Shown: positions 2,952-62,187 of the stretch, in pieces
Position numbering within the stretch: the stretch's first letter is position 1
How the letters are laid out: every line of letters starts with the position of its first letter
Virus record (IMG/VR): IMGVR_UViG_3300017786_003484
Coordinates: 180,433-244,432 of that record
Direction: 5' to 3' (one strand)
Length of the DNA stretch: 64,000 nucleotides
Notes under the pieces: generated by a model
Told to the model about the DNA's origin: nothing
Seen by the model: the letters and a program-made list of their open reading frames with translations, nothing else
Database searches by the model: none
Made by a program: the position numbers and the translations under genes

Positions 2952-2962
2952 TAAATAACGAT

Positions 2963-3589
2963 ATGAAACTTACAGTAGGTCCATCTGATTGTATTAGAGA
3001 AATAGAAGTCTTGTTACCAGATGTCTTAGATGTTGGGGTTATGTTAAGTGGAGGTGCTGACTCTGCTATACTACTTTACATGTTAATTGAAGAAAGACGA
3101 AATACAAATTCACAACATATAATTAGACCTTTTACTGTTGCTCGTCCTGATGGTGCTTGGAATTATGTTGCTCCTATAGTAGATTGGATTAGAACAAAAA
3201 CTGATATTCATATTGATGCTCCAATTAAAGTAGGCAATCCAGACTTACATCATAGTAAACAAGGACGTTCAGGAGCAGATGAAGCCTTTAGTAAATATGG
3301 AATTGAGCATATCTTCTATGGTAGTCAAGCACATCCTCCTGTAAAAATGCCAGGTGATTACCCATCAAGACCTAGTGCAGTTAACCTACCTCATACTACT
3401 TGTCCTTTTGCACTTGTTGATAAAAGACATACGTTACATTTATATGATAAACTTCAAGTATGGGATCTAATTAAACTAACTCATTCATGTACACATAGAA
3501 CCGAAGGCCGATGCGGAGAGTGTTATAATTGTACAGAACGTTCCTGGGCATTAGAAGAGCTTGGGTTCGCTGACCCTGGAGAAAAATAA
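2963..3589 (+). CDS. QueC/ExsB-like PP-loop ATP pyrophosphatase
   Basis: SGGADS PP-loop and C-terminal THSC..CGECYNCTER zinc site; divergent from canonical QueC. Confidence 0.7.
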   Translation: MKLTVGPSDCIREIEVLLPDVLDVGVMLSGGADSAILLYMLIEERRNTNSQHIIRPFTVARPDGAWNYVAPIVDWIRTKTDIHIDAPIKVGNPDLHHSKQGRSGADEAFSKYGIEHIFYGSQAHPPVKMPGDYPSRPSAVNLPHTTCPFALVDKRHTLHLYDKLQVWDLIKLTHSCTHRTEGRCGECYNCTERSWALEELGFADPGEK

Positions 3590-5163
3590 TGGCTCAGATA
3601 ATAATTTGTGCTGGCATATCAGTTATTCCATATATTAGACCTGTTGGAACATTTCAATTAGCAAATGTATTAAGACAAGCTGGATACACAGTTCAAGTTA
3701 TTGATCAATATCCATGGATTGCACATTTAGGTTTAGATGTTGTTAAGCAGTTATTAGATAAGTTTGTAGGACCCGAAACATTATGGATTGGGTATAGTAG
3801 CACTTGGTTTCGTAAGATTGAACAGATGGTTCCTGGCTCTCCAATGGCCTGGCACCTGCCAAGTAAGCCAGGAACAACTCCTGGTAATGAAGATTTAAGA
3901 ACTAATACATTATTATTTTCAGAAGAGGAAATACATGACTTACGAGCATTTGTACATAAGAAAAATCCTAATGTTAAATTTGTATTAGGAGGTGCTAGAT
4001 CTCCCAAAGGACGTATTGCTTTATTTTCTCCATTGGTTGACATTTATATAGAAGGTTATGCTGATAATACAGTAGTACGACTTAGTAAGTATTTAGAAGG
4101 AAAACTTCCTAGCCTAGATGCCAAGCCAGTTAGTTACGGAGGCAAAGAAATACCAGATGTATATATGATTAATGATGATGTTAAAGCAGAATCATTTGAT
4201 TATAATAACTTTAAATTTTCTTGGCATGATTCTGATTTAGTTAATTGGGGAGAAACCTTACCTATGGAAATTGCTCGAGGTTGTATTTTTAATTGTGCTT
4301 TTTGTTCATACCCATTAAACGGACGTAAGAAAATGGATTACTTAAAGGATCCGCTAATATTAAGAGAACAAATGATAGAAAACTATGAAAGATTTGGTAC
4401 AACAAACTATTTCTTTTTAGACGATACATTCAATGAAAGTGTAGACAAACTTGAGATATTAGCAGAACATACATTTTCTAACTTAGATTTTAGGCCACGG
4501 TTTGGAGCCTTTATGAGGGCAGACTTAATTGCACATAATCCTAGGCAGATACAACTATTAAAAGATATAGGTGTCAGCGGTGCATTCTTTGGCATTGAAA
4601 GTTTAAATTATGAAGCAAACAAATCTGTAGGTAAAGGTATTAAGAAGGATAAACTTTATGATTCCTTGTGTAGAATTAGAGAAGAATGGCCAGATGATGT
4701 TGTTACTGACTCTCAGTTTATTATGGGGTTGCCTAATGATAGCGAAGAAACAATTACAGAATGGGTTACAGAATTATTACATCCTGACTTTCCTTTAGAT
4801 GCGGCAAAGATTGAACCACTTGCATTAGATAAAGATCAAGTTAAGTCTACATGGGTAAGCAGTTTTGCCCGATTCCCTGACAGGTATGGATTTAGTTTTC
4901 CAGATGATACAAAACCTTGGCTTTGGGTAAACAATACAGGATTTTCCAGTGATGATGCACAAAAACTTAAAATGAAAATGGCCTCACAATGGAGAGTTAA
5001 AGATAAGCCTGCATGGGTAGGAGACTACGGATTAATGAATGTTGGTGTACCAGCAGATGTTATTGAGGATAGGAAAAAAGGTGCAAAATTTGATGGTAGG
5101 GACCGTGGTAGACGTATATCTTTTGTAAAGGAATATATTAAGAAGCTATTGGCTCTACCTTAA
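3589..5163 (+). CDS. B12-binding-domain radical SAM enzyme
   Basis: ARGCIFNCAFC (CxxxCxxC), FLDDTFN, GIES, IMGLP; N-terminal cobalamin-binding-like domain. Confidence 0.9.
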   Translation: MAQIIICAGISVIPYIRPVGTFQLANVLRQAGYTVQVIDQYPWIAHLGLDVVKQLLDKFVGPETLWIGYSSTWFRKIEQMVPGSPMAWHLPSKPGTTPGNEDLRTNTLLFSEEEIHDLRAFVHKKNPNVKFVLGGARSPKGRIALFSPLVDIYIEGYADNTVVRLSKYLEGKLPSLDAKPVSYGGKEIPDVYMINDDVKAESFDYNNFKFSWHDSDLVNWGETLPMEIARGCIFNCAFCSYPLNGRKKMDYLKDPLILREQMIENYERFGTTNYFFLDDTFNESVDKLEILAEHTFSNLDFRPRFGAFMRADLIAHNPRQIQLLKDIGVSGAFFGIESLNYEANKSVGKGIKKDKLYDSLCRIREEWPDDVVTDSQFIMGLPNDSEETITEWVTELLHPDFPLDAAKIEPLALDKDQVKSTWVSSFARFPDRYGFSFPDDTKPWLWVNNTGFSSDDAQKLKMKMASQWRVKDKPAWVGDYGLMNVGVPADVIEDRKKGAKFDGRDRGRRISFVKEYIKKLLALP

Positions 5164-7891: not shown

Positions 7892-7929
7892 GAAAAACTC
7901 CTCTTTTTTTCTATTATATGGTATTTAGT

Positions 7930-7984
7930 GGTTGACCTTTAGGCCCAATTGCCGTATAGTAAGTATATAATAAGGAATTAGGAG
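7930..7984 (+). promoter_or_regulatory. sigma70-type early promoter plus conserved leader
   Basis: TTGACC 7932-7937, 17 nt spacer, TATAGT 7955-7960, then ATAAGGAATTAGGAG. Confidence 0.85.
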
Positions 7985-7990: not shown

Positions 7991-8242
7991 ATGTCAACAA
8001 CACTTAGAAACGTTCCAAATTTAAACACAGACATGAAGCTGAAGCAAACACGTTTTTGGGGTGGCGACAGAGGTTCTTGTTTACAGGTTACTCAAAGGCG
8101 TCCTCAGAGTTTAGGTCCTGTTTCACCTGTTGATAGCCTCTTTACTAGCCTTCAGCTTACCAGAGAGCAGGCCCGTGAGTTAGCAGTTGAGCTGACTTTA
8201 TTTGCAAACGAAGTTGAAATTGAAGACTTAGGAGCAGAGTAA
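7991..8242 (+). CDS. small early hypothetical protein
   Basis: Directly follows the promoter/SD cassette. Confidence 0.75.
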   Translation: MSTTLRNVPNLNTDMKLKQTRFWGGDRGSCLQVTQRRPQSLGPVSPVDSLFTSLQLTREQARELAVELTLFANEVEIEDLGAE

Positions 8243-8447: not shown

Positions 8448-8649
8448 TCCATATAGCCCATTTTCTTCGATAGACCGTCAAAAATCCAACAAATATTCCG
8501 TACAAATTATTGTGACCGTCAAATTTTTGTCCGTGCTTAATTTAGGTCCCCTTATCACTAAATAGATGTAGCAAAGAACTATTAGGCCGAAAGAGAGTAA
8601 GCCTAAAGAGTTGCTTCACCAAAATTTGCTAGATATAAGGGAATGAATT

Positions 8650-12843: not shown

Positions 12844-13551
12844 ATGGGATCTTATTATAATCGATATCAGTCTCGTTCAAAAGGATATCAGTCTAGGAAC
12901 GGAGAGCCTATGATTGATATTATGACAGCATGGTCTTTAGTGGCTATGGCTGATCGTATTAATAAGCAGAAGTATGTTAAGCAAGACACAGATGATCAGA
13001 AAGCAAATCGTACTCTTATTGCACTAAGTTTAAAGCACGGTAAACCTGCAGTAACCAAAAAAGACGAAGAGTTTGGTGTTAAATTAGCAGATCATTTTGA
13101 ATACCTAGTTCTTAATTCTTTAATGGGAAAGCTCAATGAATTTGACAATAAAGTTCTTTCTATGATACAACAAACAGAAATAGGAGAACGTACTGGTTTT
13201 GCCTTGTTAGCATGTCTACCTGCTCGTTACCACAGAGAACTAACCAGAGAAGCTCTAAAAGAACAAGCAGACAAAATTGGTGTGCTGAGTAAGCACCAAG
13301 GTCAAGTCAATGAGAAGATTGAACGTACTGTTCGTCTACTTTCCAAGTACGAAGGTAAAACATTCGGAGGTAGTGTTGTTAAGGCAACTGATGGTGAAAA
13401 CTTGTACTTCTGGACTAGTAGCAGAGTAATTGAAGACTGGCCTGAGATTGGAATTGACTTTAAAGTTAAGGCTCGTGTCAAAGCACATAATTTTACAAGA
13501 GATGACGGTTGGCAAGAAACTCGGTTAACCAGGGTTCAGCCCTTATCATAA
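12844..13551 (+). CDS. hypothetical protein with possible C-terminal OB-fold
   Basis: AAGGAG SD; beta-rich end VKARVKAH..ETRLTRV. Confidence 0.6.
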   Translation: MGSYYNRYQSRSKGYQSRNGEPMIDIMTAWSLVAMADRINKQKYVKQDTDDQKANRTLIALSLKHGKPAVTKKDEEFGVKLADHFEYLVLNSLMGKLNEFDNKVLSMIQQTEIGERTGFALLACLPARYHRELTREALKEQADKIGVLSKHQGQVNEKIERTVRLLSKYEGKTFGGSVVKATDGENLYFWTSSRVIEDWPEIGIDFKVKARVKAHNFTRDDGWQETRLTRVQPLS

Positions 13552-13559
13552 CTATTAAT

Positions 13560-14132
13560 ATGAAAACAAATTTAAGTATTATCGGAGATATGTTCGAGTG
13601 GGAGGACGGCAATCCTAATAATGAGGATCGTACTGGACATTCAGTAATGTTGGTTGGAGAGAGACTAATACGTTCTGCTACTAAACAGGACATGGCTACT
13701 AAAATATTTGGTGTTATTGGTCCTAGTAATGATAATACTATGATTGTTGCCAATGCATGGGAACATGAATGGCATCATAAACATGCTAGAGATAAGTTTG
13801 GTCGCCAACTAATAGAAGAACAAACTTTAATGACATGGGTAAGAGATGGAAGACGTGAAACACATGAAGCTGATCGCTATCCAGAAGATTTAGTTATACC
13901 TGCTGATGTAGAATACTGGACACATATGCCAGGAAATCCAAAAAGATTAATGAGACCTGTACTATCAGAACGTTATCACGATGGTACACAAAGCTCAGGT
14001 GACTATGTGAGCAGACTCAAAAGAAACGAGTGGGCAGTCGTAGTTATATTAGGTGAAGTAGAAATACAAGAAGAGTCTCCTGCAAATACTTCTTGGGTGC
14101 ATATCCGAGATAATAGGTATTATATTAGGTAA
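13560..14132 (+). CDS. stand-alone Peptidase_G2-like intramolecular-chaperone domain protein
   Basis: MFEWEDGNPNNEDRTG.SV, GVI, W..K..RDKFGR, YVSR.KR.EW..V..LG.V.I; start moved to ATG 13560. Confidence 0.7.
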   Translation: MKTNLSIIGDMFEWEDGNPNNEDRTGHSVMLVGERLIRSATKQDMATKIFGVIGPSNDNTMIVANAWEHEWHHKHARDKFGRQLIEEQTLMTWVRDGRRETHEADRYPEDLVIPADVEYWTHMPGNPKRLMRPVLSERYHDGTQSSGDYVSRLKRNEWAVVVILGEVEIQEESPANTSWVHIRDNRYYIR

Positions 14133-15288: not shown

Positions 15289-15440
15289 CGGTTTCCTTTT
15301 CTGTATTAAATATATTTATCTGTGATAAGAGTTGGCAGTAGGTCATAGTGTGCTAAATACACTTGGAACATTTACGAAACATGTTTACCGTATACTGACG
15401 AGTATACAATGATATTTTATAACTTTAGGAGATTTAAAAT

Positions 15441-17803: not shown

Positions 17804-18516
17804 ACTGAGAATCCTGTAACTCTACCACTAAAGCGATTTTGTTTTAATTCTTCGCTCTGCTCTTCGTCTATCATTTGATAAAATTGATTTCTATATAGCA
17901 CAACATCTGGAACTTTAGACCAAAATTCATTGATGAGTTTCATAGCATGATTTTTATTTCTTGCCTTATATAAGATTCTTAATATGGTCACCGAAATACC
18001 ATCTTCTACCTCGGTTTGGTCCACCGGTACAGATAAGCCGTTAGTGTCTATTCCACTTAGCTCTTCAATTATATGTTTAGACGGAAGTACATTAAAGATT
18101 AGATTAGTTATCCTAACAGCCTTAACACATTTTGCAATGAATATGGCTAATTCTTGTAAGTCATTTAATGCTTCTTTAGCAACTTCTTCTGTATAATCAT
18201 CTGGCCAACCTACATGTTCTACAGTACTATTAAGTCTTCTAAAAGATGGCCATTGCCTACTATAAAATATACTTGACGACGCATACATTAAATTTTTATC
18301 TTTAAGAGTATACTCTAAACAATTCTTTCCTCCAAAGCTAGGTTCGTTTTTAAGTGTTCCAACAACTAAAGAAAGTTTACTACTAAGAACCTGTGCAGTT
18401 TCAACAGCCGTATAAGGATCAAATTGATCAACAAATACTATTCGATCTAGCCCTGGAGCATACATCATATAGTTTCCGTAAAACGGTTCAAAGTTCTTTG
18501 TTTCATATGTAGCCAT
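17800..18516 (-). CDS. hypothetical protein coupled to the Asn-synthetase-like gene
   Basis: ATGA overlap; start moved to ATG 18516 (TAAGTA-N5-ATG). Confidence 0.7.
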   Translation of the reverse strand: MATYETKNFEPFYGNYMMYAPGLDRIVFVDQFDPYTAVETAQVLSSKLSLVVGTLKNEPSFGGKNCLEYTLKDKNLMYASSSIFYSRQWPSFRRLNSTVEHVGWPDDYTEEVAKEALNDLQELAIFIAKCVKAVRITNLIFNVLPSKHIIEELSGIDTNGLSVPVDQTEVEDGISVTILRILYKARNKNHAMKLINEFWSKVPDVVLYRNQFYQMIDEEQSEELKQNRFSGRVTGFSV

Positions 18517-18563
18517 AACATTACTTACTGGCAAAAATAGTTTCTGTTTTACCAATTTTTTTC

Positions 18564-19470: not shown

Positions 19471-20089
19471 GAAGATATGGAAAATCCGCGAAGATATTAG
19501 AAAACTGTTATCTTCTTACGAATCAGATAATAAAGATGTACGAGGGCTTTCGCGGACCCTCGGCCGTCTTCTTAATAAAAAGTATAAAACAAGATTTATG
19601 TGGGTACCTTCATCAGTACTATATAGAAATCATATTGTTGTTTCTGGTGACTATGCTCATTGGGAAGATTACGAAGAACCCTCACCTATTGAAATTAGAA
19701 TACACACTCATCCTGATATTCTTAACTATCCTTTTGGTAAGAAAGGTTACAAGTCATGGAATCAGTTTACAAAAGATCTAAGTGAGTGTATAATGCATGA
19801 ACATGTTCACATGGCTCAGTTTAGATTGCACAAGGATAAGAAAGTTAAATTGCAAGCAGAATGTCCTGACTATAGATATTATGCTGATAGTGACGAAGTT
19901 GATGCTTATGCATGGACGTTAGCAAGTGAAATAGCAGACAACGGAGGAATGGAATATATTTTAAACCCTAATATTGATAGTCCTTATATGCAATATAAGA
20001 AGTTTGTATTTCCAGTTAATTACAAGTTAAAGAAGAAATTATTAAGGAAGACATATTCGTTGTTTATGAAAAGTTTGGAGTATAAGTAA
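19445..20089 (+). CDS. putative HExxH metallopeptidase-like protein
   Basis: MHEHVH..Q and YY...DEVDAYA. Confidence 0.65.
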   Translation: MKQQKMQFKKIWKIREDIRKLLSSYESDNKDVRGLSRTLGRLLNKKYKTRFMWVPSSVLYRNHIVVSGDYAHWEDYEEPSPIEIRIHTHPDILNYPFGKKGYKSWNQFTKDLSECIMHEHVHMAQFRLHKDKKVKLQAECPDYRYYADSDEVDAYAWTLASEIADNGGMEYILNPNIDSPYMQYKKFVFPVNYKLKKKLLRKTYSLFMKSLEYK

Positions 20090-22206: not shown

Positions 22207-22571
22207 TGAATCAAATTGCATTGTCAGAGTTTTATCAGTATTTTTCGCAATGCAATTGGAAACCAGACCTACACGAAAAAGTATGGTTGGTTAACTTATC
22301 TTGGGATTTAATATCTAATAAAGATAGTGAGCAAATGGGATTACCAGGAACAATAGCACATGATGTAAGTTTTAATGTATCATTTGGCTGGGGTGGCTGG
22401 GGATTTTATAATTTAAATAATTACAAGGAAAATACTGTTATTAGTAGTATTCCTGTGTTATTGTTACAAGATCAATTTGATGCTTTTATATTTAGATTAA
22501 AATACCCTGGAGCAGGTTGGATACCTACCATAAATACTGATACGGAGGAATATAATGTCAAATACTCTTAA
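22206..22571 (+). CDS. hypothetical protein
   Basis: Coupled ORF. Confidence 0.6.
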   Translation: MNQIALSEFYQYFSQCNWKPDLHEKVWLVNLSWDLISNKDSEQMGLPGTIAHDVSFNVSFGWGGWGFYNLNNYKENTVISSIPVLLLQDQFDAFIFRLKYPGAGWIPTINTDTEEYNVKYS

Positions 22572-23428: not shown

Positions 23429-23909
23429 TATGCCAGATATTAATTTAAATACTGATGACCTTATGGAACTAATGTACCAAGAGAAGGCAACCACCTTAAC
23501 AACCCATAATACCAAACTCTTAGATGGTTATAACGAAGGATGTGATGCATTAGGAATTGAAAAGAAATTCAAGTCTTCTGACTATCCTTTGACAATAACA
23601 GAAGCATTAAGTAAATGGAATATGCCTGAGGAGTATCATAATATTGACTTAGAACAATACTTCGCAGAGAAGGTATATACAACTGAACAGATTAACAGAG
23701 TCATAACTGAATTAGATTTGTTTAGAAAGAATGAAATGGAAACTATGCTAAAGTTTATGATATATCTAGTAGATATTATGAAAGAGAAAAACATAGTTTG
23801 GGGAGTTGGCAGAGGAAGTTCAGTGAGCTGTTATCTACTTTTTTTGGTAGGACTTCACTCGGTTGATTCAATTAAATATAATTTAGATATGAAGGAGTTT
23901 TTTAAATAA
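23409..23909 (+). CDS. dnaE: DNA polymerase III alpha subunit, N-terminal split fragment
   Basis: RV..EL..F, WGVGRGSSVS.Y.LFLVG...VD.IKYNL...EF then stop; no PDIDxD motif. Confidence 0.8.
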   Translation: MTIALSDMPDINLNTDDLMELMYQEKATTLTTHNTKLLDGYNEGCDALGIEKKFKSSDYPLTITEALSKWNMPEEYHNIDLEQYFAEKVYTTEQINRVITELDLFRKNEMETMLKFMIYLVDIMKEKNIVWGVGRGSSVSCYLLFLVGLHSVDSIKYNLDMKEFFK

Positions 23910-27502: not shown

Positions 27503-28275
27503 GGAAGAGCCAGTTCGCCTGTTCTATCTGCAATATATTTTGTACCATCTGCACCAACTAAATCGTTATGATATAAATGCCAATAAATATGTCTTCTAAG
27601 TCTTTTAGTAGAAACCCAATGTTGAACAGTATTAGTTCTAACTAAGTAGCAACCTTCCTGTGGTTGATTAAACGTAGTCATTTCTTCAGTTATGTGATTG
27701 CGAAACCACCATAAACTATTTTCATCGCCTTCTAAACAAATATGTACTCTCCACGGAGTATGTTGATCAACATGAGGAGTAAAGTTTTTAGCACCTACTC
27801 CTTGTAGGTTAGACATTCTTACTCTAAATCTATTTGGTATGGTAAAGTATTCTGAGATTGCTTTGCCTATATTATTAAGTTCAGAGTCTTGTTTAACACT
27901 TGAATGATGATGTACTAAGTCGCTTTCTTTAGCAATTTGTTCACCTTGTTCATCTAAAAAGTAAGCATCAACTTTTTCTCTAAATCGATAATCATGTATT
28001 CTTACATTCTCATTGGTGTTAACATCTATTCTACCTCTAGCATTATCAGTATTGCCAGGTATAACATGACCAGTATAGAAAGATTTTGCATCTAAACTAG
28101 TTCTTTCCTGTGTTGAAGTTACACATACATTATTCATAAATCTTCTAGGATCAGCTGAATTCACCCATCCTCCTCTATCTTTAGAATTTTCCAAGATAAA
28201 GTTTACTTCTTCTTTAAGTCTTTTATGATTATAAGGTATGTCTACCTTGTATATACAGTTACTTGCTAAAGGCAT
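27499..28275 (-). CDS. Asp-hydroxylase-like 2OG-Fe(II) dioxygenase
   Basis: PHVD..WRVHI, YLVRTNTVQH, R.HI. Confidence 0.7.
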   Translation of the reverse strand: MPLASNCIYKVDIPYNHKRLKEEVNFILENSKDRGGWVNSADPRRFMNNVCVTSTQERTSLDAKSFYTGHVIPGNTDNARGRIDVNTNENVRIHDYRFREKVDAYFLDEQGEQIAKESDLVHHHSSVKQDSELNNIGKAISEYFTIPNRFRVRMSNLQGVGAKNFTPHVDQHTPWRVHICLEGDENSLWWFRNHITEEMTTFNQPQEGCYLVRTNTVQHWVSTKRLRRHIYWHLYHNDLVGADGTKYIADRTGELALP

Positions 28276-28322
28276 ACTATTACTTATTTTAGAAAGACCG
28301 CAAAGTTTTCCAATAGTTTATT

Positions 28323-31614: not shown

Positions 31615-31645
31615 ACACTAAGGTCAAAATCAGTTAAGTAACAGT

Positions 31646-35850: not shown

Positions 35851-35945
35851 ATCTACATACTCAATTATAAGGCCCTACTTCGCTAAATACTGTGGAAGAT
35901 TATCCAGTATGGATATGTAATCTACCGGCATAAGGAGCATTAAAA

Positions 35946-36329: not shown

Positions 36330-38642
36330 ATGGGAATTAGAGCATATACAGGTGGACAACTTGGTAATTCAACCACAGCCGAGAACCAGTCACCAACTGG
36401 ATTAACAGTTGAAGAAGTGCAAGATGTTATTGGAATCGCTTTAAATAATGCCGTCCAAGGCGGAACAACAGTTTATGATGATGTTACTGGAACAATAGGA
36501 ATTACATTACCTGATGCAGAAGTAGCTACAAGCACATCTGCTGGTGCTATTATTCCTGGAACAGGTTTAGAGGTTGATGCAAATGGTATTGTAACTCCAA
36601 ACGTTGCAACTGCAACAACTGTTGGTGTTGTTAGAATTGGAACCGGTTTAGCGGTTGATGGTTTTGGAACTTTATCGGCAGTAGTTTCATCAGCAGGAGC
36701 AACAGCATTAAGCGGATTAACAGATGTTGATACTAATGGAGTAACAACAGGACAAATTTTAAAATATGATGGTACATCCTTTGTACCGGCTGACGATGCA
36801 GGTATTGCAGACTATAACAATTTAACTAACTTACCAACATTATTTGATGGAGACTATACTAGTTTATCAAACACACCAGCATTACCAACAGACATATCTG
36901 ATTTAACAGATGTAGGAAATTTAATTGGTAGTGGAGGCGGAGGAGCCGCAGGACCACAAGGACCTGCCGGAGCAGACGGAGCAGACGGAGCCGATGGAGC
37001 AGACGGAGCAACTGGTGCAACAGGACCAGCAGGAGCAGACGGAGCAACAGGACCAGCAGGAGCAGACGGAGCCGCAGGACCACAAGGTGTAGCAGGAGCA
37101 ACTGGTGCAACAGGACCCGCAGGTATAGATGGAACAACAATTACAACTGCAACTGTTGATGTAAATGATGACCTACTTATTACATTAAGTGACGGAACAG
37201 TTATTAATGCCGGTAACTCAACTGGAGCAACTGGTGCAACAGGAGCACAAGGTGCAACTGGAGCAACTGGACCACAAGGAGCACAAGGATTACAAGGACT
37301 AGGTGTAGCAAGTGCAACAGTAGATGCTAATGATGATTTAATCATTGTTTTAAGTGACGGAAGTCAATTAAATGCAGGTAATACTGCTGGACCACAGGGT
37401 ATACAAGGAATTCAAGGAAGTACTGGAGCAACAGGTGCTGTCGGACCTGCAGGTAATGGCGTAGCAACTGCAACTGTTGATGCAAATGATGATTTACAAA
37501 TAACACTAACTGATGGTAGTATAATTAATGCAGGTAATACTGCTGGACCACAAGGTATACAAGGAATTCAAGGTGCAACTGGTGCAACTGGTTCTGCAGG
37601 ACAAAATGGATTAACTGTTACCAATGCAGTCAAAGATGCAAATGACGATTTAATTATTACATTAAGTGATGCTTCAACAATTAATGCAGGAAATATTACT
37701 GGACCTGCTGGAGCACAAGGTATACAAGGTGTAGCAGGAGCAGATAGCACAGTAGTAGGACCTGCTGGAGCCGACGGAGCTGACGGAGCAGACGGAGCAA
37801 CTGGACCTGCCGGAGCAACTGGACCTGCCGGACCTGCTGGAGCAGATGGAGCAGATGGAGCAGATGGTTCTAATGGAATTGACCTAACAGCATTTTCAAT
37901 AACAACTGGTGCTTTAACAGCAAACGGCGGATTAGCATACGATAATACAACTGGTGTGTTTACTTTTAATCCGGTAACTGCTGGCGGTGCTTCTAATGTA
38001 ACATCTATAGGAACTTTGTCAGACGTTGATGTTACAGGATTAACTGATGGACAAGTATTAGCATTTGATAGTGGATCAAACACATGGGAACCAACTACAA
38101 TGTCAGGCGGTGGTGCAAGTACATTATCAGCATTAACAGATGTTAGCACAACTGCACCAGCAATAGGACAAGCGATTGCATGGGATGGATCAGAATGGGC
38201 ACCTACTACAATATCAGGAGGAGGCGGAGGCGCCGCGAGTGGAATATTTAGAGCCGAGGTTACTGTAAATTATGCAAGTAATGGTTCGTTATCATCAGTT
38301 TCAGTACTAAGTGGTGGAATATCTGCTACGGTAGTAGACTCAACTTCAACAGTATGTACAGTCGAGTTTGAATTTACTGGAAGTGTATGCAACCCATTAA
38401 GTATACAAGTTTATGGTTATCAGAGAGTAGCCAATCAATACGTTACAAGAGCATTAGCAAGTGACTTCTCAAACAGAAAGGTCGCCGCTGGAGGCTCATC
38501 AGGAAGTCCTACTGCATTCAACTCGTATAATCCGGCAACAAACAAGTTAACTTTAAGTTTAACAAAATCGTTAACTGGTGCAAGTGGCGGACTTGGACAA
38601 ACGACTGAGGCAATAGTTTCCTTCTTATTAAGTAACTCGTAA
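36330..38642 (+). CDS. collagen-like tail fibre protein
   Basis: Multiple Gly-X-Y runs, L..L.DV fibre repeats, G/A/T-rich composition. Confidence 0.85.
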   Translation: MGIRAYTGGQLGNSTTAENQSPTGLTVEEVQDVIGIALNNAVQGGTTVYDDVTGTIGITLPDAEVATSTSAGAIIPGTGLEVDANGIVTPNVATATTVGVVRIGTGLAVDGFGTLSAVVSSAGATALSGLTDVDTNGVTTGQILKYDGTSFVPADDAGIADYNNLTNLPTLFDGDYTSLSNTPALPTDISDLTDVGNLIGSGGGGAAGPQGPAGADGADGADGADGATGATGPAGADGATGPAGADGAAGPQGVAGATGATGPAGIDGTTITTATVDVNDDLLITLSDGTVINAGNSTGATGATGAQGATGATGPQGAQGLQGLGVASATVDANDDLIIVLSDGSQLNAGNTAGPQGIQGIQGSTGATGAVGPAGNGVATATVDANDDLQITLTDGSIINAGNTAGPQGIQGIQGATGATGSAGQNGLTVTNAVKDANDDLIITLSDASTINAGNITGPAGAQGIQGVAGADSTVVGPAGADGADGADGATGPAGATGPAGPAGADGADGADGSNGIDLTAFSITTGALTANGGLAYDNTTGVFTFNPVTAGGASNVTSIGTLSDVDVTGLTDGQVLAFDSGSNTWEPTTMSGGGASTLSALTDVSTTAPAIGQAIAWDGSEWAPTTISGGGGGAASGIFRAEVTVNYASNGSLSSVSVLSGGISATVVDSTSTVCTVEFEFTGSVCNPLSIQVYGYQRVANQYVTRALASDFSNRKVAAGGSSGSPTAFNSYNPATNKLTLSLTKSLTGASGGLGQTTEAIVSFLLSNS
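36943..37870 (+). repeat. collagen 9-bp repeats alternating with four copies of a ~28-aa spacer module
   Basis: GGAGCAGAC-type repeats; ATVDANDDL.I.L.DG..INAGN x4; near-identical DNA repeat at ~37371 and ~37527. Confidence 0.85.
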
Positions 38643-49561: not shown

Positions 49562-49577
49562 TTAACTAAATAAGAGT

Positions 49578-51215
49578 ATGAAGATTACTGAACTTGATAC
49601 TCTAAAAGAAGCCGGTGGTTATGTTGCCCGAAATGCAAAAGAGGCCGCTGATCCAAGATTCTCAATGAGTATTGGAGGCGATGTAACCACCCATACTATG
49701 CGAGATATGATAGCAGACTTCTATCCTGTTAAGCCTCAAAAGGGTGATAAACAATCAGTCGTTAAAGAATCTAAAGTAGAGATGTGCTCAGACGCCTGTT
49801 GCGGACAACCTGTAACAGAATGTACTTGCGGTTCAGACTGCAAACATTGTGATTGTTATGAAAAAAACAACAAAGTAAATGCGAATCGTAACTACGGTAT
49901 GAGAAAAGCATCTGGACAAGGAGATAACCCAATGGTAGCAGAAAAAAGACCTGATCATGAAGTTGAAATGGCAAAAGCAGACGTACACAAACTTGCTGAA
50001 TATTCAGCTAAATTATCTAACTTGATTGATAATGTCAGCGAAGAAGAGGGTTTGCCTGGATGGATTCAAAAGAAAATTACATTAGCATCAGATTATATTG
50101 GTAGTGTTTATCATAAGTTAGATCATGAGATGGGTTCACCAATAACAGAATCAGACAAGCCTGGTTTTGATATGATTAATAAAATATTTGATAGCTTAAC
50201 TGATGAGGAAAAGGTTGATATACAGAGACAATTAACTGTAAAGGTTAGAGGCATTAGTGTTCCTCCAATTAATCCTGGACCATTTAAATTCAAACAAAGA
50301 AATCCTAATGATAAAGATATTGCTGACATGCCTTTATCACAATTACAGAACTTGTATAGTGATGTTAACGAAGGCGATAATAAAATGGGTCCTCAAGACA
50401 TTACACCAGGTGATCGTGTAGAATTTGAAGGTGAAAAGTTTGAAGTAGTGGATGTTGAACTTGATACGATTGTTGCTGATAATTTAGAAACAGGACTTAG
50501 GAATAGGCTTAAGACGGATAAAGTAACTAGAATATTTGGTGCGGATGCACAAACAGACCAAGATAAACAAGACATGGGAGATATGTTTAAGCGACTTGAT
50601 AAAGCAGGGTCTGGTTCATTAAAACATGTTGCAACAGAAGGCGACGGACGTAAGAAAGGTATCCACGGTAAAGGACACCCTATGAGAAAGAAACAACAGG
50701 CCGCAATACATGCAGGCGAATCAGCAAAAAAGCCTTTAAGTCGTTTCGCTACTGAAATTGGAATTCAAGAAATAGATTGCTGGGACGGTTACAAAAAAGA
50801 TGGAACTAAACCCGGCACAGGTAAGAATAAAGGAAAACGTGTTAATAATTGCGTTAAAGAAGAAGAAATTACTTTAAGCGAAGAGCAAAACTTTCATGAA
50901 GAGTTTGGCTACTTAGGATATGCTTTGGAAGAAGGTATGTTTGAAGCTGAATATCAAGGACGTAAAGTAAAACTTAATAAGCCAATGCGTGGTGATGTTA
51001 AGAAGTTTAAAGTATATGTTAAAGATCCAAAAACAGGTAATGTCAAGAAAGTTAACTTTGGTCATGGAGGCACTAGTGCTAAGAAAGCAGGACAAAAGAC
51101 TATGAAGATTAAAAAGTCTAATCCAGCAAGACGCAAGAGTTTTAGAGCTAGACACAACTGTGATAATCCAGGTCCAAAGACAAAAGCACGTTACTGGTCC
51201 TGTAGAGCCTGGTAA
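49578..51215 (+). CDS. modular protein with C-terminal DUF6321-like domain, probable internal head protein
   Basis: EAEYQGRKV.LNKP..KVNFG..RKSFRARH.C...KARYWSC; CW.GY..NCV module; DHEV.MA..W.Q.KIT.A.DY module. Confidence 0.65.
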   Translation: MKITELDTLKEAGGYVARNAKEAADPRFSMSIGGDVTTHTMRDMIADFYPVKPQKGDKQSVVKESKVEMCSDACCGQPVTECTCGSDCKHCDCYEKNNKVNANRNYGMRKASGQGDNPMVAEKRPDHEVEMAKADVHKLAEYSAKLSNLIDNVSEEEGLPGWIQKKITLASDYIGSVYHKLDHEMGSPITESDKPGFDMINKIFDSLTDEEKVDIQRQLTVKVRGISVPPINPGPFKFKQRNPNDKDIADMPLSQLQNLYSDVNEGDNKMGPQDITPGDRVEFEGEKFEVVDVELDTIVADNLETGLRNRLKTDKVTRIFGADAQTDQDKQDMGDMFKRLDKAGSGSLKHVATEGDGRKKGIHGKGHPMRKKQQAAIHAGESAKKPLSRFATEIGIQEIDCWDGYKKDGTKPGTGKNKGKRVNNCVKEEEITLSEEQNFHEEFGYLGYALEEGMFEAEYQGRKVKLNKPMRGDVKKFKVYVKDPKTGNVKKVNFGHGGTSAKKAGQKTMKIKKSNPARRKSFRARHNCDNPGPKTKARYWSCRAW

Positions 51216-51327
51216 CCTACATAAAATACTAATATAATCATTGTTTTGACTAACCAACCCTCTAAATTTGGCTAAATAGTTTGCTTAGGAAATTTACCCT
51301 AAAGCATAACAGAAGGAGATTAATAAT

Positions 51328-56063: not shown

Positions 56064-56882
56064 TTATATAAATTCAACTCTATCAAATATAAATGAGTCT
56101 TTATATCTGAGACTAAATTCTTTGAATTGGTCACTCTCAACATATCCAATAGGAAATTCATAAGGTATATTAGTCATATTATAAGATTTAATCCAATCTT
56201 TAAATTGTGTTGACTTGTATATCTTTTTTCTGTTATCATTTAAATCAATAAAGAATCCACCAAAAGAACCTAACCTTCCTGTACAATCATCTTGTGTAGG
56301 ATCATCATTTTCTATAAATGATTGAAGTACACATTTACCTAAGATAGATTGATCTAGTAAAACTAAATTTTGTCGATTCATATCTGGATATCCGTAATTC
56401 AACTGTTGATCTTCTTTAGAAAATTGCAACCAAGTAGAACGATTGCTTTGTCCTCGATTAACATTAAAATGTATATTAGTTGGAATATTTTCTTCATAAA
56501 ATATACTATTTTGGCCTGGTGTAGTATAACATTCTAATCTGTGTACTGATTCATTTATTTGATTGATCATTTCAAAGTCTAGTATTCTAAAATTAGAAGT
56601 AAAATATCTGTGAAGCATGTTGAGGGTTGTCTGATTAAAATCAAATCTGTCTGGAACATTTAAGTTCGAGTTAAGAATAGTTAGAGCTTGTAATATATTG
56701 TTCCAATGTTCTGTGATTTTGCTTTCGTCTGGTTCCTGCTTTTTGAAAGTTTCTATTATATCATATCTATAATAAGATCTATGCATTTTCTTAAAATGAT
56801 CAAACCATTTTTTAACTGCTGGTTTGTCAAATAGTTTTACTTCTATTTGTTTATTATTCTTAAATATCATCTTGAGTTTCAT
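56064..56882 (-). CDS. hypothetical protein
   Basis: Q..LN.LH.YF..IN..VH.LE motif; start moved to ATG 56882 (TAAATA-N5-ATG). Confidence 0.7.
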   Translation of the reverse strand: MKLKMIFKNNKQIEVKLFDKPAVKKWFDHFKKMHRSYYRYDIIETFKKQEPDESKITEHWNNILQALTILNSNLNVPDRFDFNQTTLNMLHRYFTSNFRILDFEMINQINESVHRLECYTTPGQNSIFYEENIPTNIHFNVNRGQSNRSTWLQFSKEDQQLNYGYPDMNRQNLVLLDQSILGKCVLQSFIENDDPTQDDCTGRLGSFGGFFIDLNDNRKKIYKSTQFKDWIKSYNMTNIPYEFPIGYVESDQFKEFSLRYKDSFIFDRVEFI

Positions 56883-56930
56883 ATCAATATTTAACGTTTT
56901 TAAATGAAAGAGCAACAGTTAAATAGTTGG

Positions 56931-57018
56931 ATGGTAAATAAAAGCATACACAAGTAATTCGCAAGTTGGGAGAAGGCGCCAACACGTTCGTCTAGTTTAA
57001 AACTAGGCGGTTTTTTTT
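56931..57018 (+). ncRNA. candidate small RNA / micro-ORF transcript
   Basis: TAAATA 56920-56925, 8-codon ORF, GTTGG/CCAAC hairpin, strong terminator. Confidence 0.5.
56989..57018 (+). terminator. intrinsic terminator
   Basis: CGTCTAGTT-TAA-AACTAGGCG followed by T8. Confidence 0.85.
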
Positions 57019-60012: not shown

Positions 60013-60071
60013 TTAGGTTTACAAGTCTTAAATCTAATAATAAATATTTCTAAGTAACCCAGGAGAGTTTT

Positions 60072-61142
60072 ATGCGGAAGTTAGAAAAAGAAACCTACTT
60101 GAACCCAAGATGGGGTTCAATGTTTGAAGGAATGTCCTATAACGAAATAATGGACTTGGGATTTTCCTTTTGGCATGCTAAGTTAGTTGAAAGACAATTC
60201 TTTTGCTGGCGTGGTTTAGATTCTAAAATGACTGATGAGCAACTATGGGACTTAGGTACATTGGTTGGTAAGCCTTGGGATACAGAGGGTTATAAAGTTG
60301 GAGCAGATATCTCAGGCTTTAAATTTGATGGAACTACTGACAAAGAAAATGAAGCAGTGGTTGACTCTTCTACAGGACAAGATATTATTGAGGATATGAA
60401 AACCTCAAAGGATAAGCCAGTTAGTTATTTCTTTTCTGGTAATACTATATTTGGTGACAAATATATGGCTTATCATTCAGACCTCCCTCACACATTAGCA
60501 ACTGGACACGAACCTTATCCTGCTAGAGCTTTATTGATGGTTAATATGCCTGAGGATAGTTCAGGTGATACACAATGGCTTGATATGGAAGGTGCTTGGG
60601 AACAAATGACTGATGAAGAAAAGGCTCCTTATCAAGGGCTATTCATTAAACAACAACATATGTATCATCCAGGAAGAAAGTATAGCACATTTCCTTTTCT
60701 CAAACAGAATCCGTGGAATGGTAAATGGTCACCAAGATTAAACTGTATTGCAGGAAATAGAAAAGCAAAGGCTTGGATAGCACCGGGCGGAGTAATTAAA
60801 AAAGGAGTAGGATCTTTAGGTATCAAAGAAGCAAGGCAACTTGTTTTTGATTTATACGATATACTAGAAACTAAAGAACATGCCTTGTATACACATCAAT
60901 GGCAGAATGGTGATATTCTCCTCTACACCAATTGGCCTTCAGTTCATGCTAGAGCCGGAGTTAATATTAACCAAGACAGCGGTGAAAAGAGAGAATTAAA
61001 AAGAATTACTATTGATACACCGTTTCCAGATGATTATATGGTTGACAGAGGTAGTGATTATTTTCCTGCTAGAGTTAAGAATCCTAAATACAGTGAGTTC
61101 CCTCAAATTGAAGAGCCATTTCCAGGCTTCTTTAAAAAGTAA
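60072..61142 (+). CDS. TauD/TfdA-family 2OG dioxygenase
   Basis: YHSD, GDT.W.D...AW, HQWQ.GD.L...N...HAR, R.L.R. Confidence 0.85.
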   Translation: MRKLEKETYLNPRWGSMFEGMSYNEIMDLGFSFWHAKLVERQFFCWRGLDSKMTDEQLWDLGTLVGKPWDTEGYKVGADISGFKFDGTTDKENEAVVDSSTGQDIIEDMKTSKDKPVSYFFSGNTIFGDKYMAYHSDLPHTLATGHEPYPARALLMVNMPEDSSGDTQWLDMEGAWEQMTDEEKAPYQGLFIKQQHMYHPGRKYSTFPFLKQNPWNGKWSPRLNCIAGNRKAKAWIAPGGVIKKGVGSLGIKEARQLVFDLYDILETKEHALYTHQWQNGDILLYTNWPSVHARAGVNINQDSGEKRELKRITIDTPFPDDYMVDRGSDYFPARVKNPKYSEFPQIEEPFPGFFKK

Positions 61143-62172
61143 GATTATCTATAATATTCCATTGTTTTTGCACATAACGTTTAAAGACCTCTCGGTTAGC
61201 TAAAAGAGCTGGATACATCTTTTTATACATATCTTGCTTTTCTTTTCTAGTCATTTGCCTTACCCAATCTAATATTCTTGCTATATTAATTGGTATCATA
61301 TTATAATCTTCAATTGAATTAATTCCCAGTCTAATTGGCCAATAATCCAAAAAGGTCTCAAAGCCTTGTTCTTTTAAATGTTCATAAATGGCAGGGTTTC
61401 CATTTATAATAAATGGACGCAGTCCTAAGATTGGTTTAAAGATCTTTTCTGAAAGAAATGGATAGTCTTCACGATAATATTGATCAGTTTCGCTGACTAT
61501 ATTAATTAAATGATTTCTCCATATATCTCCATCTCCTAAAGAAAAGATATCATTAGGAATTGAATTGGCTCCGCTTGACTCTTGTAAAGATATTCCAGGA
61601 GGATTTTCATTTAAATGAAATAACCAACCTTTTTCTTTTGCTCTATTACCATACCCAGTATCTTCATATCCGAGTGTAACGATACCATGCTGATTTAATC
61701 TTAACAAATAGAGTTGACTAACCAGTTCAACTCTATGCCTAGTTGGCTTTCTATTATACGAAATAAAATCATATTTGAAATCTGGGTTTAAAAACATTTC
61801 TTGTTCAGTTGGTTTGATAAAATTATCTTCTACATTGATTGCCCAAAAAGAATAACGATTTCTTTTATCTGTAGCATGATTGCCAATGATATACACATTT
61901 GGCCTTATTGATAACTGATGTAGTGCATCATCAATTCCATTATTCACATAAGGAGGATCAAAGTCTGTCATTAAAAATATATTGGCATCTACGTCATTAA
62001 TGATTTCTTCTGCAATATGATATTTTCCAAACGTTAAATTATAAACATAATTCTTTTTATAAGGAAACTCTTCATCTATTTGTAACCTTATTCTATTCCA
62101 TATCTTCTGCCAGACTATACCACTTCGATTGGTAGGAAACAGCGGATCGGTCATTAACACAGGTAAGCTCAT
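61132..62172 (-). CDS. glycosyltransferase-related phage protein (putative)
   Basis: YNRKP..HR..LV, INIVSET..FLSEKIFKPI...RPFII.G. Confidence 0.5.
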   Translation of the reverse strand: MSLPVLMTDPLFPTNRSGIVWQKIWNRIRLQIDEEFPYKKNYVYNLTFGKYHIAEEIINDVDANIFLMTDFDPPYVNNGIDDALHQLSIRPNVYIIGNHATDKRNRYSFWAINVEDNFIKPTEQEMFLNPDFKYDFISYNRKPTRHRVELVSQLYLLRLNQHGIVTLGYEDTGYGNRAKEKGWLFHLNENPPGISLQESSGANSIPNDIFSLGDGDIWRNHLINIVSETDQYYREDYPFLSEKIFKPILGLRPFIINGNPAIYEHLKEQGFETFLDYWPIRLGINSIEDYNMIPINIARILDWVRQMTRKEKQDMYKKMYPALLANREVFKRYVQKQWNIIDNLTF

Positions 62173-62187
62173 AGTAATATTTAACCC

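What the first reader, a model, noticed from the sequence alone, without database searches (positions are those of the whole stretch)
2952..62183. TAA(A/G/C)TA-N5-ATG: a phage promoter class producing leaderless mRNAs
Seen: eight genes with no clear SD have the hexamer exactly 5 nt before ATG, and the spacer always ends in T: 2963(+), 13560(+), 18516(-), 28275(-), 31646(+), 49578(+), 56882(-), 62172(-). A ninth case (micro-ORF 56931) has the same spacing but its spacer ends in G. The same hexamer precedes SD-led genes (8559, 15354, 35884, 51273, 62621). Known: T4-type late promoters are -10-only TATAAATA elements read by a phage sigma factor. Inference: +1 is the A of ATG, so many tailoring enzymes and DnaJ are translated from leaderless mRNAs. 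This also corrects three ORF starts.
Basis: partly seen in the sequence, partly recalled or inferred. Interest (0 to 1): 0.6.

Follow-up and report, generated by a model that had tools for sequence, protein, structure and literature searches.

The report
Phage late promoters abutting start codons
In a marine giant phage related to T4, about one gene in fourteen has a T4-style late-promoter box placed exactly where it should make the messenger RNA begin at the AUG itself. These genes would then be translated without a ribosome-binding leader, which sequence and comparative evidence support but no RNA 5' end yet shows.

Summary
All eight TAA(A/G/C)TA-N4-T-ATG sites exist at the stated coordinates and all are gene starts (8 found, 1.5 expected in shuffles). 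In the whole 244-kb phage record the hexamer-to-ATG spacing histogram has one sharp peak at 5 nt: 21 sites with ORFs of at least 60 aa against about 3 at other spacings, p about 5e-11.

The phage is a marine jumbo myovirus of the Rak2/PA5oct/Atu_ph07 group. It encodes a gp55-family late sigma. No other sigma and no phage RNA polymerase was detected. In T4 the late box lies at -13 to -6, so TAAATA plus 5 nt puts +1 on the A of ATG.

Supporting features:
- The motif genes have no Shine-Dalgarno sequence and use ATG only.
- Position -1 is a pyrimidine in 51 of 56 sites across four genomes.
- Hexamer distance is bimodal: 5 nt, or 17-33 nt before SD-led structural genes.
- Two sites have a terminator directly upstream.
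- The arrangement is conserved at orthologous genes in diverged relatives (Fisher p 8e-8).
- It is not enriched in T4, PA5oct, CBB, XaC1 or Atu_ph07.

Not shown: the actual 5' ends. Only metatranscriptome contigs were available. "Many tailoring enzymes" and the TAACTA site are overstated.

The parts
2952..2965 (+). TAAATA-acgat-ATG: predicted leaderless late promoter and start of the QueC-like gene 2963-3589
   Evidence: sequence; PF06508 QueC, E 2e-8; no SD; the upstream gene ends 11 nt before the ATG
13549..13562 (+). TAACTA-ttaat-ATG before the Peptidase_G2-like gene 13560-14132. This is the weakest member: the C variant, and its TAA is the stop codon of gene 12844-13551
   Evidence: TAACTA is not enriched at spacing 5; the G001 orthologue has GGAG instead; public calls give both the 190-aa and 207-aa forms
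18514..18527 (-). TAAGTA-atgtt-ATG: predicted leaderless late promoter and start of gene 17800-18516 (238 aa, unknown function)
   Evidence: the 238-aa ATG form is the one on public record and the TTG form is absent; lies in a divergent intergenic region
28273..28286 (-). TAAGTA-atagt-ATG: predicted leaderless late promoter and start of gene 27499-28275 (258 aa, unknown function)
31635..31648 (+). TAAGTA-acagt-ATG: predicted leaderless late promoter and start of DnaJ 31646-32467
   Evidence: the J domain starts at residue 4, which fixes the start; the orthologue in G001 (36% aa identity) keeps TAAGTA-tgcac-ATG
49567..49580 (+). TAAATA-agagt-ATG: predicted leaderless late promoter and start of gene 49578-51215 (545 aa)
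   Evidence: an in-frame stop lies 4 codons upstream
56880..56893 (-). TAAATA-ttgat-ATG: predicted leaderless late promoter and start of gene 56064-56882 (272 aa)
   Evidence: the 272-aa ATG form is on public record and the TTG form is not
62170..62183 (-). TAAATA-ttact-ATG: predicted leaderless late promoter and start of gene 61132-62172 (346 aa)
   Evidence: the same start is called by JGI, Logan and ENA
62191..62219 (-). Intrinsic terminator hairpin (12 pairs) with a T-rich tail. Its stem ends 7 nt before the hexamer of the 62172 gene, which leaves no room for a leader
   Evidence: terminator scan; fold, -22 kcal/mol
56920..56933 (+). TAAATA-gttgg-ATG with G at -1, an 8-codon micro-ORF. A terminator follows at 56988-57010, so this may be a short late transcript rather than a gene
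8559..8564 (+). TAAATA hexamer 85 nt before gene 8650: candidate late promoter with a leader
15354..15359 (+). TAAATA hexamer 81 nt before gene 15441: candidate late promoter with a leader
35884..35889 (+). TAAATA hexamer 56 nt before SD-led gene 35946, at the head of the tail-fibre block
51273..51278 (+). TAAATA hexamer 49 nt before an SD-led ORF at 51328
62621..62626 (-). TAAATA hexamer 64 nt before gene 62239-62556 (-)
38629..38634 (+). TAAGTA hexamer 23 nt before SD-led gene 38658-40643 (661 aa)
60041..60056 (+). Tandem TAAATA and TAAGTA hexamers, 25 and 15 nt before SD-led gene 60072-61142
7922..7927 (-). TAAATA hexamer 30 nt before the SD-led aldo-keto reductase gene 6929-7891 (-)
15313..15318 (-). 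TAAATA hexamer 24 nt before SD-led gene 14728-15288 (-)
7960..7965 (+). TAAGTA hexamer 25 nt before SD-led gene 7991-8242
20083..20088 (+). TAAGTA hexamer 24 nt before gene 20113-20553
22531..22536 (+). TAAATA hexamer 18 nt before SD-led gene 22555-22773
23873..23878 (+). TAAATA hexamer 30 nt before SD-led gene 23909-24334
31437..31442 (+). TAAATA hexamer 28 nt before an SD-led small ORF at 31471

Best explanation
TAA[A/G]TA is the -10-like core of this phage's late promoters. It is read by host RNA polymerase carrying the phage's gp55-family sigma, whose gene lies at G000:C1:33330-34298, outside the window. As in T4, there is no -35 element, and the box ends at -6.

In about 22 of about 310 genes (8 of them in the window) the box sits at -11 to -6 relative to the A of ATG. 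Transcription should then start on the AUG, or within a base of it. The mRNA has no 5' leader and no Shine-Dalgarno sequence, and would be translated by the leaderless route (5'-terminal AUG, initiator tRNA, IF2, 70S or 30S ribosomes).

The same box 17-33 nt or more upstream serves ordinary SD-led late genes such as sheath, tube and adaptor.

Shown: the motif, its rigid spacing, the statistics, the absence of SD, the pyrimidine at -1, the adjoining terminators, conservation in relatives, and the presence of the sigma.

Inferred: that this sigma reads this box, that the genes are late, the exact +1, and the mode of translation.
For: (1) Spacing peak at exactly 5 nt: 21 against 3.3, p 5e-11. It is seen with ATG only. 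In the window, 8 sites against 1.46 expected.

(2) Geometry. The T4 late box occupies -13 to -6 (PMC2988020). In the cryo-EM structure the A at -12 and the bases at -9 and -8 are flipped out, and T4 promoter P23 reads TATAAATA-CTCCT-G(+1) (PMC7892883). So TAAATA plus 5 nt places +1 on the A of ATG.

(3) gp55-family sigma: phrog_12791 E 8.5e-85, phrog_234 E 5e-25. T4 gp55 matches at E 4.8e-6. The only PDB match is gp55 chain 7d7c_F, and pocket residues R57, F86, Y97 and T99 are conserved. The gene lies beside gp47 and gp46 homologues, as in T4. No sigma-70 region 2 or 4, no T7-like RNA polymerase and no RNA polymerase beta subunit was found.

(4) Nothing is conserved upstream of the hexamer, so there is no -35.

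(5) Position -1 is T in 19 of 22 motif genes here. It is a pyrimidine in 51 of 56 sites across four genomes, against about 50% background. This fits the Y(-1)R(+1) rule for start sites.

(6) Hexamer-to-start distance is bimodal: 5 nt, or 17-33 nt, with almost nothing at 6-16 nt. The distant class precedes SD-led sheath, tube, adaptor and virion genes. The spacing-5 class includes the portal, a 68-aa gene just after it, virion proteins and a PAAR protein.

(7) None of the 20 motif genes in my start-refined gene set has an SD core of at least 4 nt.

(8) Strong terminators lie directly before the hexamer at window 62219-62191 and at G000 about 48,941-48,975.

(9) Conservation.
- In 67 related loci with at most 80% portal identity, spacing 5 occurs 77 times, spacing 7 19 times, spacing 8 8 times, and the rest 0-9.
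- Whole relatives G001, G002 and G004 each show their own spacing-5 peak.
- In a cross-table of orthologues between G000 and G001, 8 pairs have the motif in both, 3 in G000 only, 4 in G001 only and 107 in neither (Fisher p 7.7e-8). Spacers and flanks differ, and the hexamer switches between TAAATA and TAAGTA.

(10) TAAATA is 25% intergenic, while only 5% of the genome is intergenic.
Against: No 5' end was observed. The six metatranscriptomes that hold the phage are kept as contigs only, and the portal and the 68-aa gene are covered too thinly to tell. One RNA contig (run X15) starts 56 nt upstream of the portal ATG, so read-through or DNA carry-over exists.

Portal orthologues carry the hexamer at 5, 7 or 8 nt, so the spacing is not invariant. 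G001 and G004 have a secondary peak at 4 nt.

Only 6 bp of the 8-bp T4 box are conserved, and G is accepted at -8. gp33 and gp45 were not found, although the record is only 74% complete.

The portal gene has AAGG just upstream of the hexamer. This could act as a weak SD on longer transcripts.

The host is unknown, so its ability to translate leaderless mRNA is untested.
Confidence: 0.65

Rival explanations
1. The hexamer is the late promoter, but initiation is not on the AUG. RNAs would start a few bases upstream or downstream, or these genes would be expressed mainly from longer read-through transcripts. The close apposition would then reflect genome compaction (a box squeezed between a stop and a start codon) rather than a leaderless translation mode.
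For: Many sites lie 4-17 nt after the upstream same-strand gene. Portal orthologues tolerate spacings of 7-8 nt, and spacing 4 occurs in G001 and G004. An RNA contig spans the portal upstream region.
Against: Compaction alone would not fix one spacing to the base. It would not demand ATG and a pyrimidine at -1, and it would not remove every SD. Five sites are in divergent or wide intergenic regions, and two follow terminators. In the portal variants with spacing 7-8, a Y-A step is kept at position 5/6 after the box. This still places +1 there and predicts only a 3-nt leader.
Confidence: 0.15
2. TAA[AG]TA at -11 to -6 is a non-Shine-Dalgarno translation signal on the RNA, for example an A/U-rich ribosome or S1 binding element. 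It might be linked to the phage's own bS21 protein. On this view it is not a promoter.
For: The motif occupies the place where an SD would sit, and the genes lack an SD. The phage encodes bS21. Portal orthologues show spacings of 5-8 nt, a tolerance like that of ribosome-binding sites.
Against: The same hexamer occurs 17-85 nt upstream of genes that have good SDs, where it cannot act as a ribosome-binding site. The spacing is far tighter than that of the SDs in the same genome, which spread over -15 to -11. The hexamer matches the T4 late box in sequence and position. A pyrimidine at -1 has no known role in ribosome binding. UAAAUA pairs with at most 3-4 bases of the 16S rRNA 3' end (from the general anti-SD sequence; my own reasoning).
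Confidence: 0.08
3. The motif marks an RNA processing site. An endoribonuclease would cut just before AUG and create leaderless mRNAs after transcription.
For: The T4 literature warns that mapped late 5' ends can be processing products (PMC2988020). The rigid distance to AUG would also fit a cut site.
Against: No nuclease candidate was identified here. The terminator-hexamer-ATG arrangement at 62219-62170 argues for new initiation. The identity of the motif with a sigma-recognised box, plus the presence of that sigma, is more economical.
Confidence: 0.05
4. It is a chance pattern of AT-rich sequence near start codons.
For: The genome is 36% G+C. A first-order Markov model alone gives 19.6 matches of the loose pattern against 30 observed.
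Against: The excess lies entirely at real gene starts: 21 against 3.3, p 5e-11. In the window there are 8 sites against 1.46 expected. Relatives show the same peak and orthologues conserve it.
Confidence: 0.01

Closest known systems
T4 late promoters (TATAAATA at -13 to -6, read by gp55 with gp33 and the gp45 clamp)
   Same: Both are -10-only boxes with no -35 element. The core TAAATA is shared, and the same distance to +1 is predicted. A gp55-family sigma is present next to gp46/gp47 homologues. The box precedes virion genes.
   Different: Only 6 bp are conserved, and positions -13 and -12 are free. G is accepted at -8. gp33 and gp45 were not detected, and the sigma is 322 aa with a 160-aa N-terminal extension. 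In T4 itself the box-N5-ATG arrangement is not enriched (15 against 12 in the control), and I know of no leaderless T4 late mRNA class.
ATAAATA predicted late promoters of the Rak2-like jumbo phages CBB and GAP32 (PMC5259590)
   Same: They belong to the same wider phage group (portal 46-47% identical). The motif is the same, found upstream of structural genes. A gp55-like sigma is present without detectable gp33 or gp45.
   Different: Those promoters were described as ordinary promoters, predicted by MEME alone. CBB, PA5oct, XaC1 and Atu_ph07 show no enrichment of the N5-ATG arrangement, and their portal genes and the small genes that follow have SDs.
Leaderless transcripts of Thermus phages (phiYS40, Lalka27a)
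   Same: A phage promoter class has its -10 element next to the start codon, so the A or G of the initiator codon is the 5' end (bioRxiv 10.64898/2026.04.20.719267).
   Different: There, most transcripts are leaderless, the host (Thermus) itself uses leaderless mRNAs widely, and the promoters are different (TAGGGT or sigma-A-like). Here it is a minority class (about 7%) in an SD-using genome, tied to a gp55-type box.
Lambda cI mRNA from PRM, and leaderless genes as modelled by GeneMarkS-2
   Same: These are mRNAs starting at AUG with a -10 box at a fixed short distance. A promoter box localised just upstream of starts is the accepted computational signature of leaderless transcription (Lomsadze 2018, cited; lambda cI from my own knowledge).
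   Different: Those are isolated genes or host-wide habits read by the housekeeping sigma. They are not a phage-sigma-specific late class.

Membership tests
T4-type late promoter | A -10-like box only, with no conserved -35 or other upstream element | tested here: met
   Column counts from -40 to -12 of the 22 sites show no conserved position
T4-type late promoter | 8-bp consensus TATAAATA | tested here: not met
   Only TAA[AG]TA (-11 to -6) is fixed. At -12, A occurs in 11 of 22 sites, and -13 is free. This is a 6-bp variant, nearer to the (A/C)TAAATA of CBB
T4-type late promoter | A gp55-family sigma encoded by the phage | tested here: met
   phrog_12791 E 8.5e-85 and phrog_234 E 5e-25; T4 gp55 E 4.8e-6; PDB 7d7c_F E 2.6e-4 with R57, F86, Y97 and T99 conserved
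T4-type late promoter | Co-activator gp33 and sliding clamp gp45 | tested here: inconclusive
   No match to T4 gp33, T4 gp45 or PF09116. However, the record is 74% complete and these proteins diverge fast. They were also not found in CBB
T4-type late promoter | Drives late (virion) genes | tested here: met
   By annotation only. The hexamer precedes the portal, sheath, tube, adaptor Ad2, virion proteins and PAAR. There are no time-course data
T4-type late promoter | Transcription starts about 6 nt after the last A of the box | not testable with these tools
   RNA runs are held as contigs only. There is indirect support from T/C at -1 and A at +1
Leaderless mRNA | The 5' end of the primary transcript is at the A of AUG (or within a few nt) | not testable with these tools
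   Predicted from the geometry only. Read laying gave contigs, which cannot show ends
Leaderless mRNA | No Shine-Dalgarno sequence | tested here: met
   0 of 20 motif genes have an SD core of at least 4 nt, against 182 of 290 other genes
Leaderless mRNA | AUG start codon (GUG and UUG work poorly at a 5' end in proteobacteria) | tested here: met
   The spacing-5 peak is seen for ATG (21) but not for GTG (0) or TTG (3, at background)
Leaderless mRNA | A promoter -10 box at a fixed short distance from the start codon across many genes | tested here: met
   relatives

The most novel reading that the evidence does not exclude
This marine jumbo-phage clade may have evolved a dedicated second translation channel for part of its late programme. 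gp55-type promoters are fused to start codons, so that the portal, prohead-core, DnaJ and other mRNAs begin with AUG and bypass SD pairing. The phage's own bS21, or some attack on SD-led host or early mRNAs, might favour these messages late in infection. That would be a coupled switch of transcription and translation not described for T4-like phages.
Probability: 0.15. Interest if true: 0.8.

Novelty: new variant of a known kind. Interest (0 to 1): 0.55.

Why it matters
If the 5' ends are where the geometry predicts, about 7% of the genes of an abundant marine giant phage are expressed without ribosome-binding leaders from a phage-sigma promoter. These include the portal and a chaperone.

This matters in three ways.
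- It would add a leaderless class to the well-studied T4 late-transcription model.
- It gives a simple rule for fixing start codons and finding late genes in uncultured relatives.
- It raises a testable question about how a phage that otherwise uses strong SDs gets 5'-AUG messages translated in its host, and whether its own bS21 plays a part.

It also shows that a promoter-to-start distance histogram can reveal expression classes in metagenomic phage genomes with no culture.

Tried and rejected
- **phiKZ-type TATG promoter.** My first thought was a phiKZ-type late promoter read by a phage multisubunit RNA polymerase. I dropped it. The phage is T4/Rak2-related, and no RNA polymerase beta subunit or T7-like polymerase was found.
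- **Stop-codon artefact.** The hexamer's TAA, or its TA plus the next G, is the upstream stop codon at only 4 of 22 sites. The TAA is also out of frame with the ATG.
- **megablast of 12 kb of the window against phage GenBank.** No match.
- **Related loci for three window genes.** Searches with the 18516, 56882 and DnaJ proteins gave none, none and one weak hit. Conservation of the window's own sites could therefore be tested only for DnaJ and the 13560 gene, through the whole relatives G001 and G002.
- **RNA evidence.** Six metatranscriptomes hold the phage, but only as contigs. Laying four of them on L011:5050-11049 (6,000 letters) showed high-depth contigs starting at L011 7192, 7206 and 7211 in three runs. 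These starts lie 18-37 nt after the +1 predicted for a leadered TAAGTA (hexamer at L011 7163-7168). In the fourth run the contig starts at 7081. Contigs end at or just before the terminator after the major head gene. This is weak and cannot show 5' ends.
- **Contigs encoding the 346-aa protein.** All have DNA-like context, so they give no 5' information.
- **Rfam scan of the window.** Only the 4 tRNAs.
- **Fold of the 56931-57020 unit.** Unremarkable, z -0.93.
- **Literature.** No paper in the library pairs 'leaderless' with TATAAATA or with T4-like late promoters.

Not used: the large protein searches, structure prediction and complex prediction were not needed. No alternative genetic code was used.

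Full report
**What the window is.** The window is the last 64 kb (180433-244432) of a 244,432-bp IMG/VR virus record, estimated 74% complete, with 36% G+C. The portal protein is 45-51% identical to those of Atu_ph07, PA5oct, GAP32, CBB and XaC1, which are jumbo myoviruses distantly related to T4. The genome has T4-like baseplate, sheath, tube, portal, major head, gp46 and gp47 genes. Near-identical DNA occurs in many marine and seawater metagenomes and in six metatranscriptomes. Most genes have clear AGGAG-type Shine-Dalgarno sequences: 182 of 310 in my rough gene set.

**The observation.** TAAVTA-N4-T-ATG matches exactly those eight places in the window, where shuffles give 1.46 +/- 1.16. All eight are starts of ORFs of 190-545 aa.

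In the whole record the distance from TAA[ACG]TA to a following ATG has a single sharp peak at 5 nt:
- 30 against a mean of 12.2 for any ATG;
- 21 against 3.3 for ATGs opening at least 60 codons (p 5e-11);
- nothing comparable for GTG or TTG.

The matches that are not gene starts are no more frequent than background, so the whole excess is at real starts. A blind count of positional hexamers upstream of first ATGs recovers TAAATA and TAAGTA at -11 alongside the SD words. About 22 genes (7%) belong to the class. T occupies -1 in 19 of 22, against 31% at other ATG starts. TAACTA (site 13560) and TAATTA are not enriched on their own.

**Two distance classes.** Measured to refined starts, TAAATA and TAAGTA lie either exactly 5 nt from the ATG (18 cases) or 17-33 nt away, with almost nothing at 6-16 nt. 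The distant class precedes SD-led genes, many of them virion genes: tail sheath, tail tube, head-tail adaptor and virion structural proteins. In that class T is the commonest base at the fifth position after the hexamer (22 of 51), and A at the sixth (26 of 51). The close class includes the portal, the 68-aa gene after it, two virion proteins, a PAAR protein, DnaJ and a QueC-like protein. TAAATA is 25% intergenic in a genome that is 5% intergenic. A signal that works at both distances, with a forbidden zone where a leader would be too short to carry an SD, behaves like a promoter and not like a ribosome-binding site.

**Why +1 should be the A of ATG.** The T4 late promoter is an 8-bp box with its first two bases at -13 and -12, and it has no -35 element (PMC2988020). 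In the cryo-EM open complex the A at -12 and the bases at -9 and -8 are flipped into gp55 pockets, and the T4 promoter P23 used there reads TATAAATA-CTCCT-G (PMC7892883). TAAATA is therefore -11 to -6, the spacer is 5 nt, and the sixth base is +1, which is exactly the geometry found here. The pyrimidine at -1 and purine at +1 match the usual preference of bacterial RNA polymerase.

**The sigma factor.**
- It matches phrog_12791 at E 8.5e-85 and phrog_234 at E 5e-25, and T4 gp55 at E 4.8e-6.
- Its only PDB match is gp55 itself, with pocket residues R57, F86, Y97 and T99 kept and L54 and H95 changed.
- It lies next to gp47 and gp46 homologues, as in T4.
- No sigma-70 region 2 or 4, T7-like polymerase or RNA polymerase beta subunit was found. 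The T7-family search had no positive control.
- gp33 and gp45 were not found. The same was reported for the relative CBB.

**Local architecture.** None of the 20 motif genes in my start-refined set has an SD core of 4 nt or more. At window 62219-62191 (-) a 12-pair terminator hairpin with a T tail ends 7 nt before the hexamer of the 62172 gene. A second strong terminator lies directly before TAAATA-tttct-ATG at G000 48989. In both cases a transcript for the downstream gene has to begin in the roughly 20 nt that hold only the box and the ATG. For DnaJ the J domain begins at residue 4, so the start is not in doubt.

**Relatives.** A portal-based search gave 79 related IMG/VR loci. In the 67 with at most 80% portal identity, the hexamer-to-ATG spacing is 5 in 77 cases, 7 in 19, 8 in 8, and 0-9 elsewhere.
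- The 68-aa gene after the portal keeps hexamer-N5-ATG in nearly every relative that shows it. Meanwhile the hexamer toggles between TAAGTA and TAAATA, and the spacer and flanks vary.
- The portal gene has the box at 5, 7 or 8 nt, or about 22 nt with an SD. In the 7-8 nt variants a pyrimidine-A step is kept 5-6 nt after the box, followed by CT-ATG. This predicts a 3-nt leader.

Five larger related records all exceed the reversed-pattern control: 31/8, 9/1, 8/5, 12/1 and 6/0. Three of these were read in full and have their own peaks: G001 has 23 at spacing 5 and 9 at spacing 4, G002 has 6, and G004 has 8 at spacing 5 and 4 at spacing 4. Position -1 is a pyrimidine in 51 of 56 sites over the four genomes.

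Across orthologue pairs with aligned N-termini, the motif co-occurs far more than chance:

| Comparison | Both | G000 only | Relative only | Neither | Fisher p |
|---|---|---|---|---|---|
| G000 vs G001 | 8 | 3 | 4 | 107 | 7.7e-8 |
| G000 vs G004 | 4 | 2 | 1 | 46 | 2.5e-4 |
| G000 vs G002 | 2 | 5 | 1 | 51 | 0.035 |

DnaJ keeps the arrangement in G001 at only 36% protein identity. By contrast PA5oct, Atu_ph07, CBB, XaC1 and T4 show no enrichment (20/17, 16/19, 25/19, 18/28, 15/12). Their portal genes and the small genes that follow have SDs. The class is thus a trait of this uncultured marine clade, with gains and losses inside it.

**RNA data.** Both read tools were used once. Only Logan contigs exist for the RNA runs. 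On L011:5050-11049, contigs of much higher word depth begin at 7192, 7206 and 7211 in three runs, and at 7081 in the fourth. The three close starts lie 18-37 nt after the +1 predicted for a leadered TAAGTA (hexamer 7163-7168; the gene's ATG is at 7213). Contigs stop at or just before the terminator after the major head gene. The portal and the 68-aa gene are covered too thinly to judge. This fits transcription of the structural module from a hexamer promoter. It cannot show a 5' end, and it says nothing direct about the leaderless sites.

**Rivals.**
- A non-SD ribosome signal is unlikely. The same hexamer works far upstream of good SDs, the spacing is tighter than that of the SDs, and the motif equals a sigma box.
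- A processing site cannot be excluded without 5'-triphosphate data. It needs an unknown nuclease and does not explain the terminator-box-ATG units.
- The most serious alternative is that the box is a promoter but initiation or expression is not strictly leaderless, through short leaders or read-through messages. The 4, 7 and 8 nt variants show some play.

I put the full leaderless reading at about 0.65, and 'late-promoter core' alone at about 0.85.

**Against the known.** T4 late promoters, and their ATAAATA look-alikes predicted in CBB and GAP32, are known. Phage promoter classes that yield leaderless mRNAs are known in Thermus phages. Single cases such as lambda cI are textbook knowledge. 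I found no paper joining the two for T4-type promoters, and the PA5oct transcriptome paper reports neither late promoters nor leaderless RNAs. I therefore rate it a new variant of a known kind.

- 'Many tailoring enzymes' is not borne out. The two radical-SAM genes lack the hexamer, and the aldo-keto reductase has it only 30 nt upstream with an SD. Only the QueC-like gene has the abutting motif.
- Site 13560 is the weakest.
- Two of the three 'corrected' starts are already the public calls.
- The gp55-like sigma exists but lies outside the window.

Noticed in passing
G000:C1:178113-178409 (+), about 2 kb before the window start (locus L145): The phage encodes a ribosomal protein bS21 homologue (PF01165, E 4.9e-17, above the curated cut-off). 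bS21 takes part in start-site selection, so it could bear on how SD-less messages are translated. That link is speculation.
   Followed up: partly
window 18564-18592 (+) and 57040-57068 (+): There are near-consensus sigma-70-type promoters: TTGACA-17-TACAAT before the run of small genes starting at 18620, and TTGACC-17-TATATT before gene 57102. They are probably early promoters read by the host sigma. The first overlaps a TAAATA hexamer.
   Followed up: partly
window 56920-57018 (+): TAAATA-N5-ATG opens only 8 codons. It is followed by a terminator (56988-57010 plus T8), giving a possible 88-nt late transcript or micro-peptide unit. There is no Rfam match, and the fold z-score is -0.93.
   Followed up: partly
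window 31646-35196 (+): A chaperone module: DnaJ (J domain plus C-terminal domain), a 166-aa ORF, then a 737-aa ClpB-like AAA+ protein (phrog_4871, E 5e-234).
   Followed up: no
window 2963-7891: An enzyme cluster: QueC-like PP-loop protein, a B12-binding-like radical SAM protein (3589-5163), a second radical SAM protein (5138-6100, -), and an aldo-keto reductase (6929-7891, -). It may be a nucleotide or cofactor modification pathway.
   Followed up: no
window 11637-11713, 55894-56057, 57801-57874: Four tRNA genes: Arg-ACG, Leu-TAA, Met-CAT and Trp-CCA.
   Followed up: no
L010:14330-15298 (G000:C1:33330-34298): The gp55-like sigma is 322 aa, against 185 aa in T4. It has an N-terminal extension of about 160 aa with no Pfam match. 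Pocket residues H95 and L54 of T4 gp55 are replaced by F and Y. This might relate to the relaxed -12 position and the A/G tolerance at -8.
   Followed up: partly
relatives G001 and G004 (L104-L118, L131-L137): A secondary hexamer-to-ATG spacing of 4 nt occurs (9 and 4 sites), which is rare in the window's own genome (3 sites). This suggests some flexibility in where the start falls in those phages.
   Followed up: no
L011:7081-10947 (G000 45081-48947): In four marine metatranscriptomes the block from the 238-aa gene to the major head gene sits on contigs of 4- to 40-fold higher word depth than those covering the portal and the 68-aa gene. Contigs end at or just before the terminator after the head gene.
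   Followed up: partly
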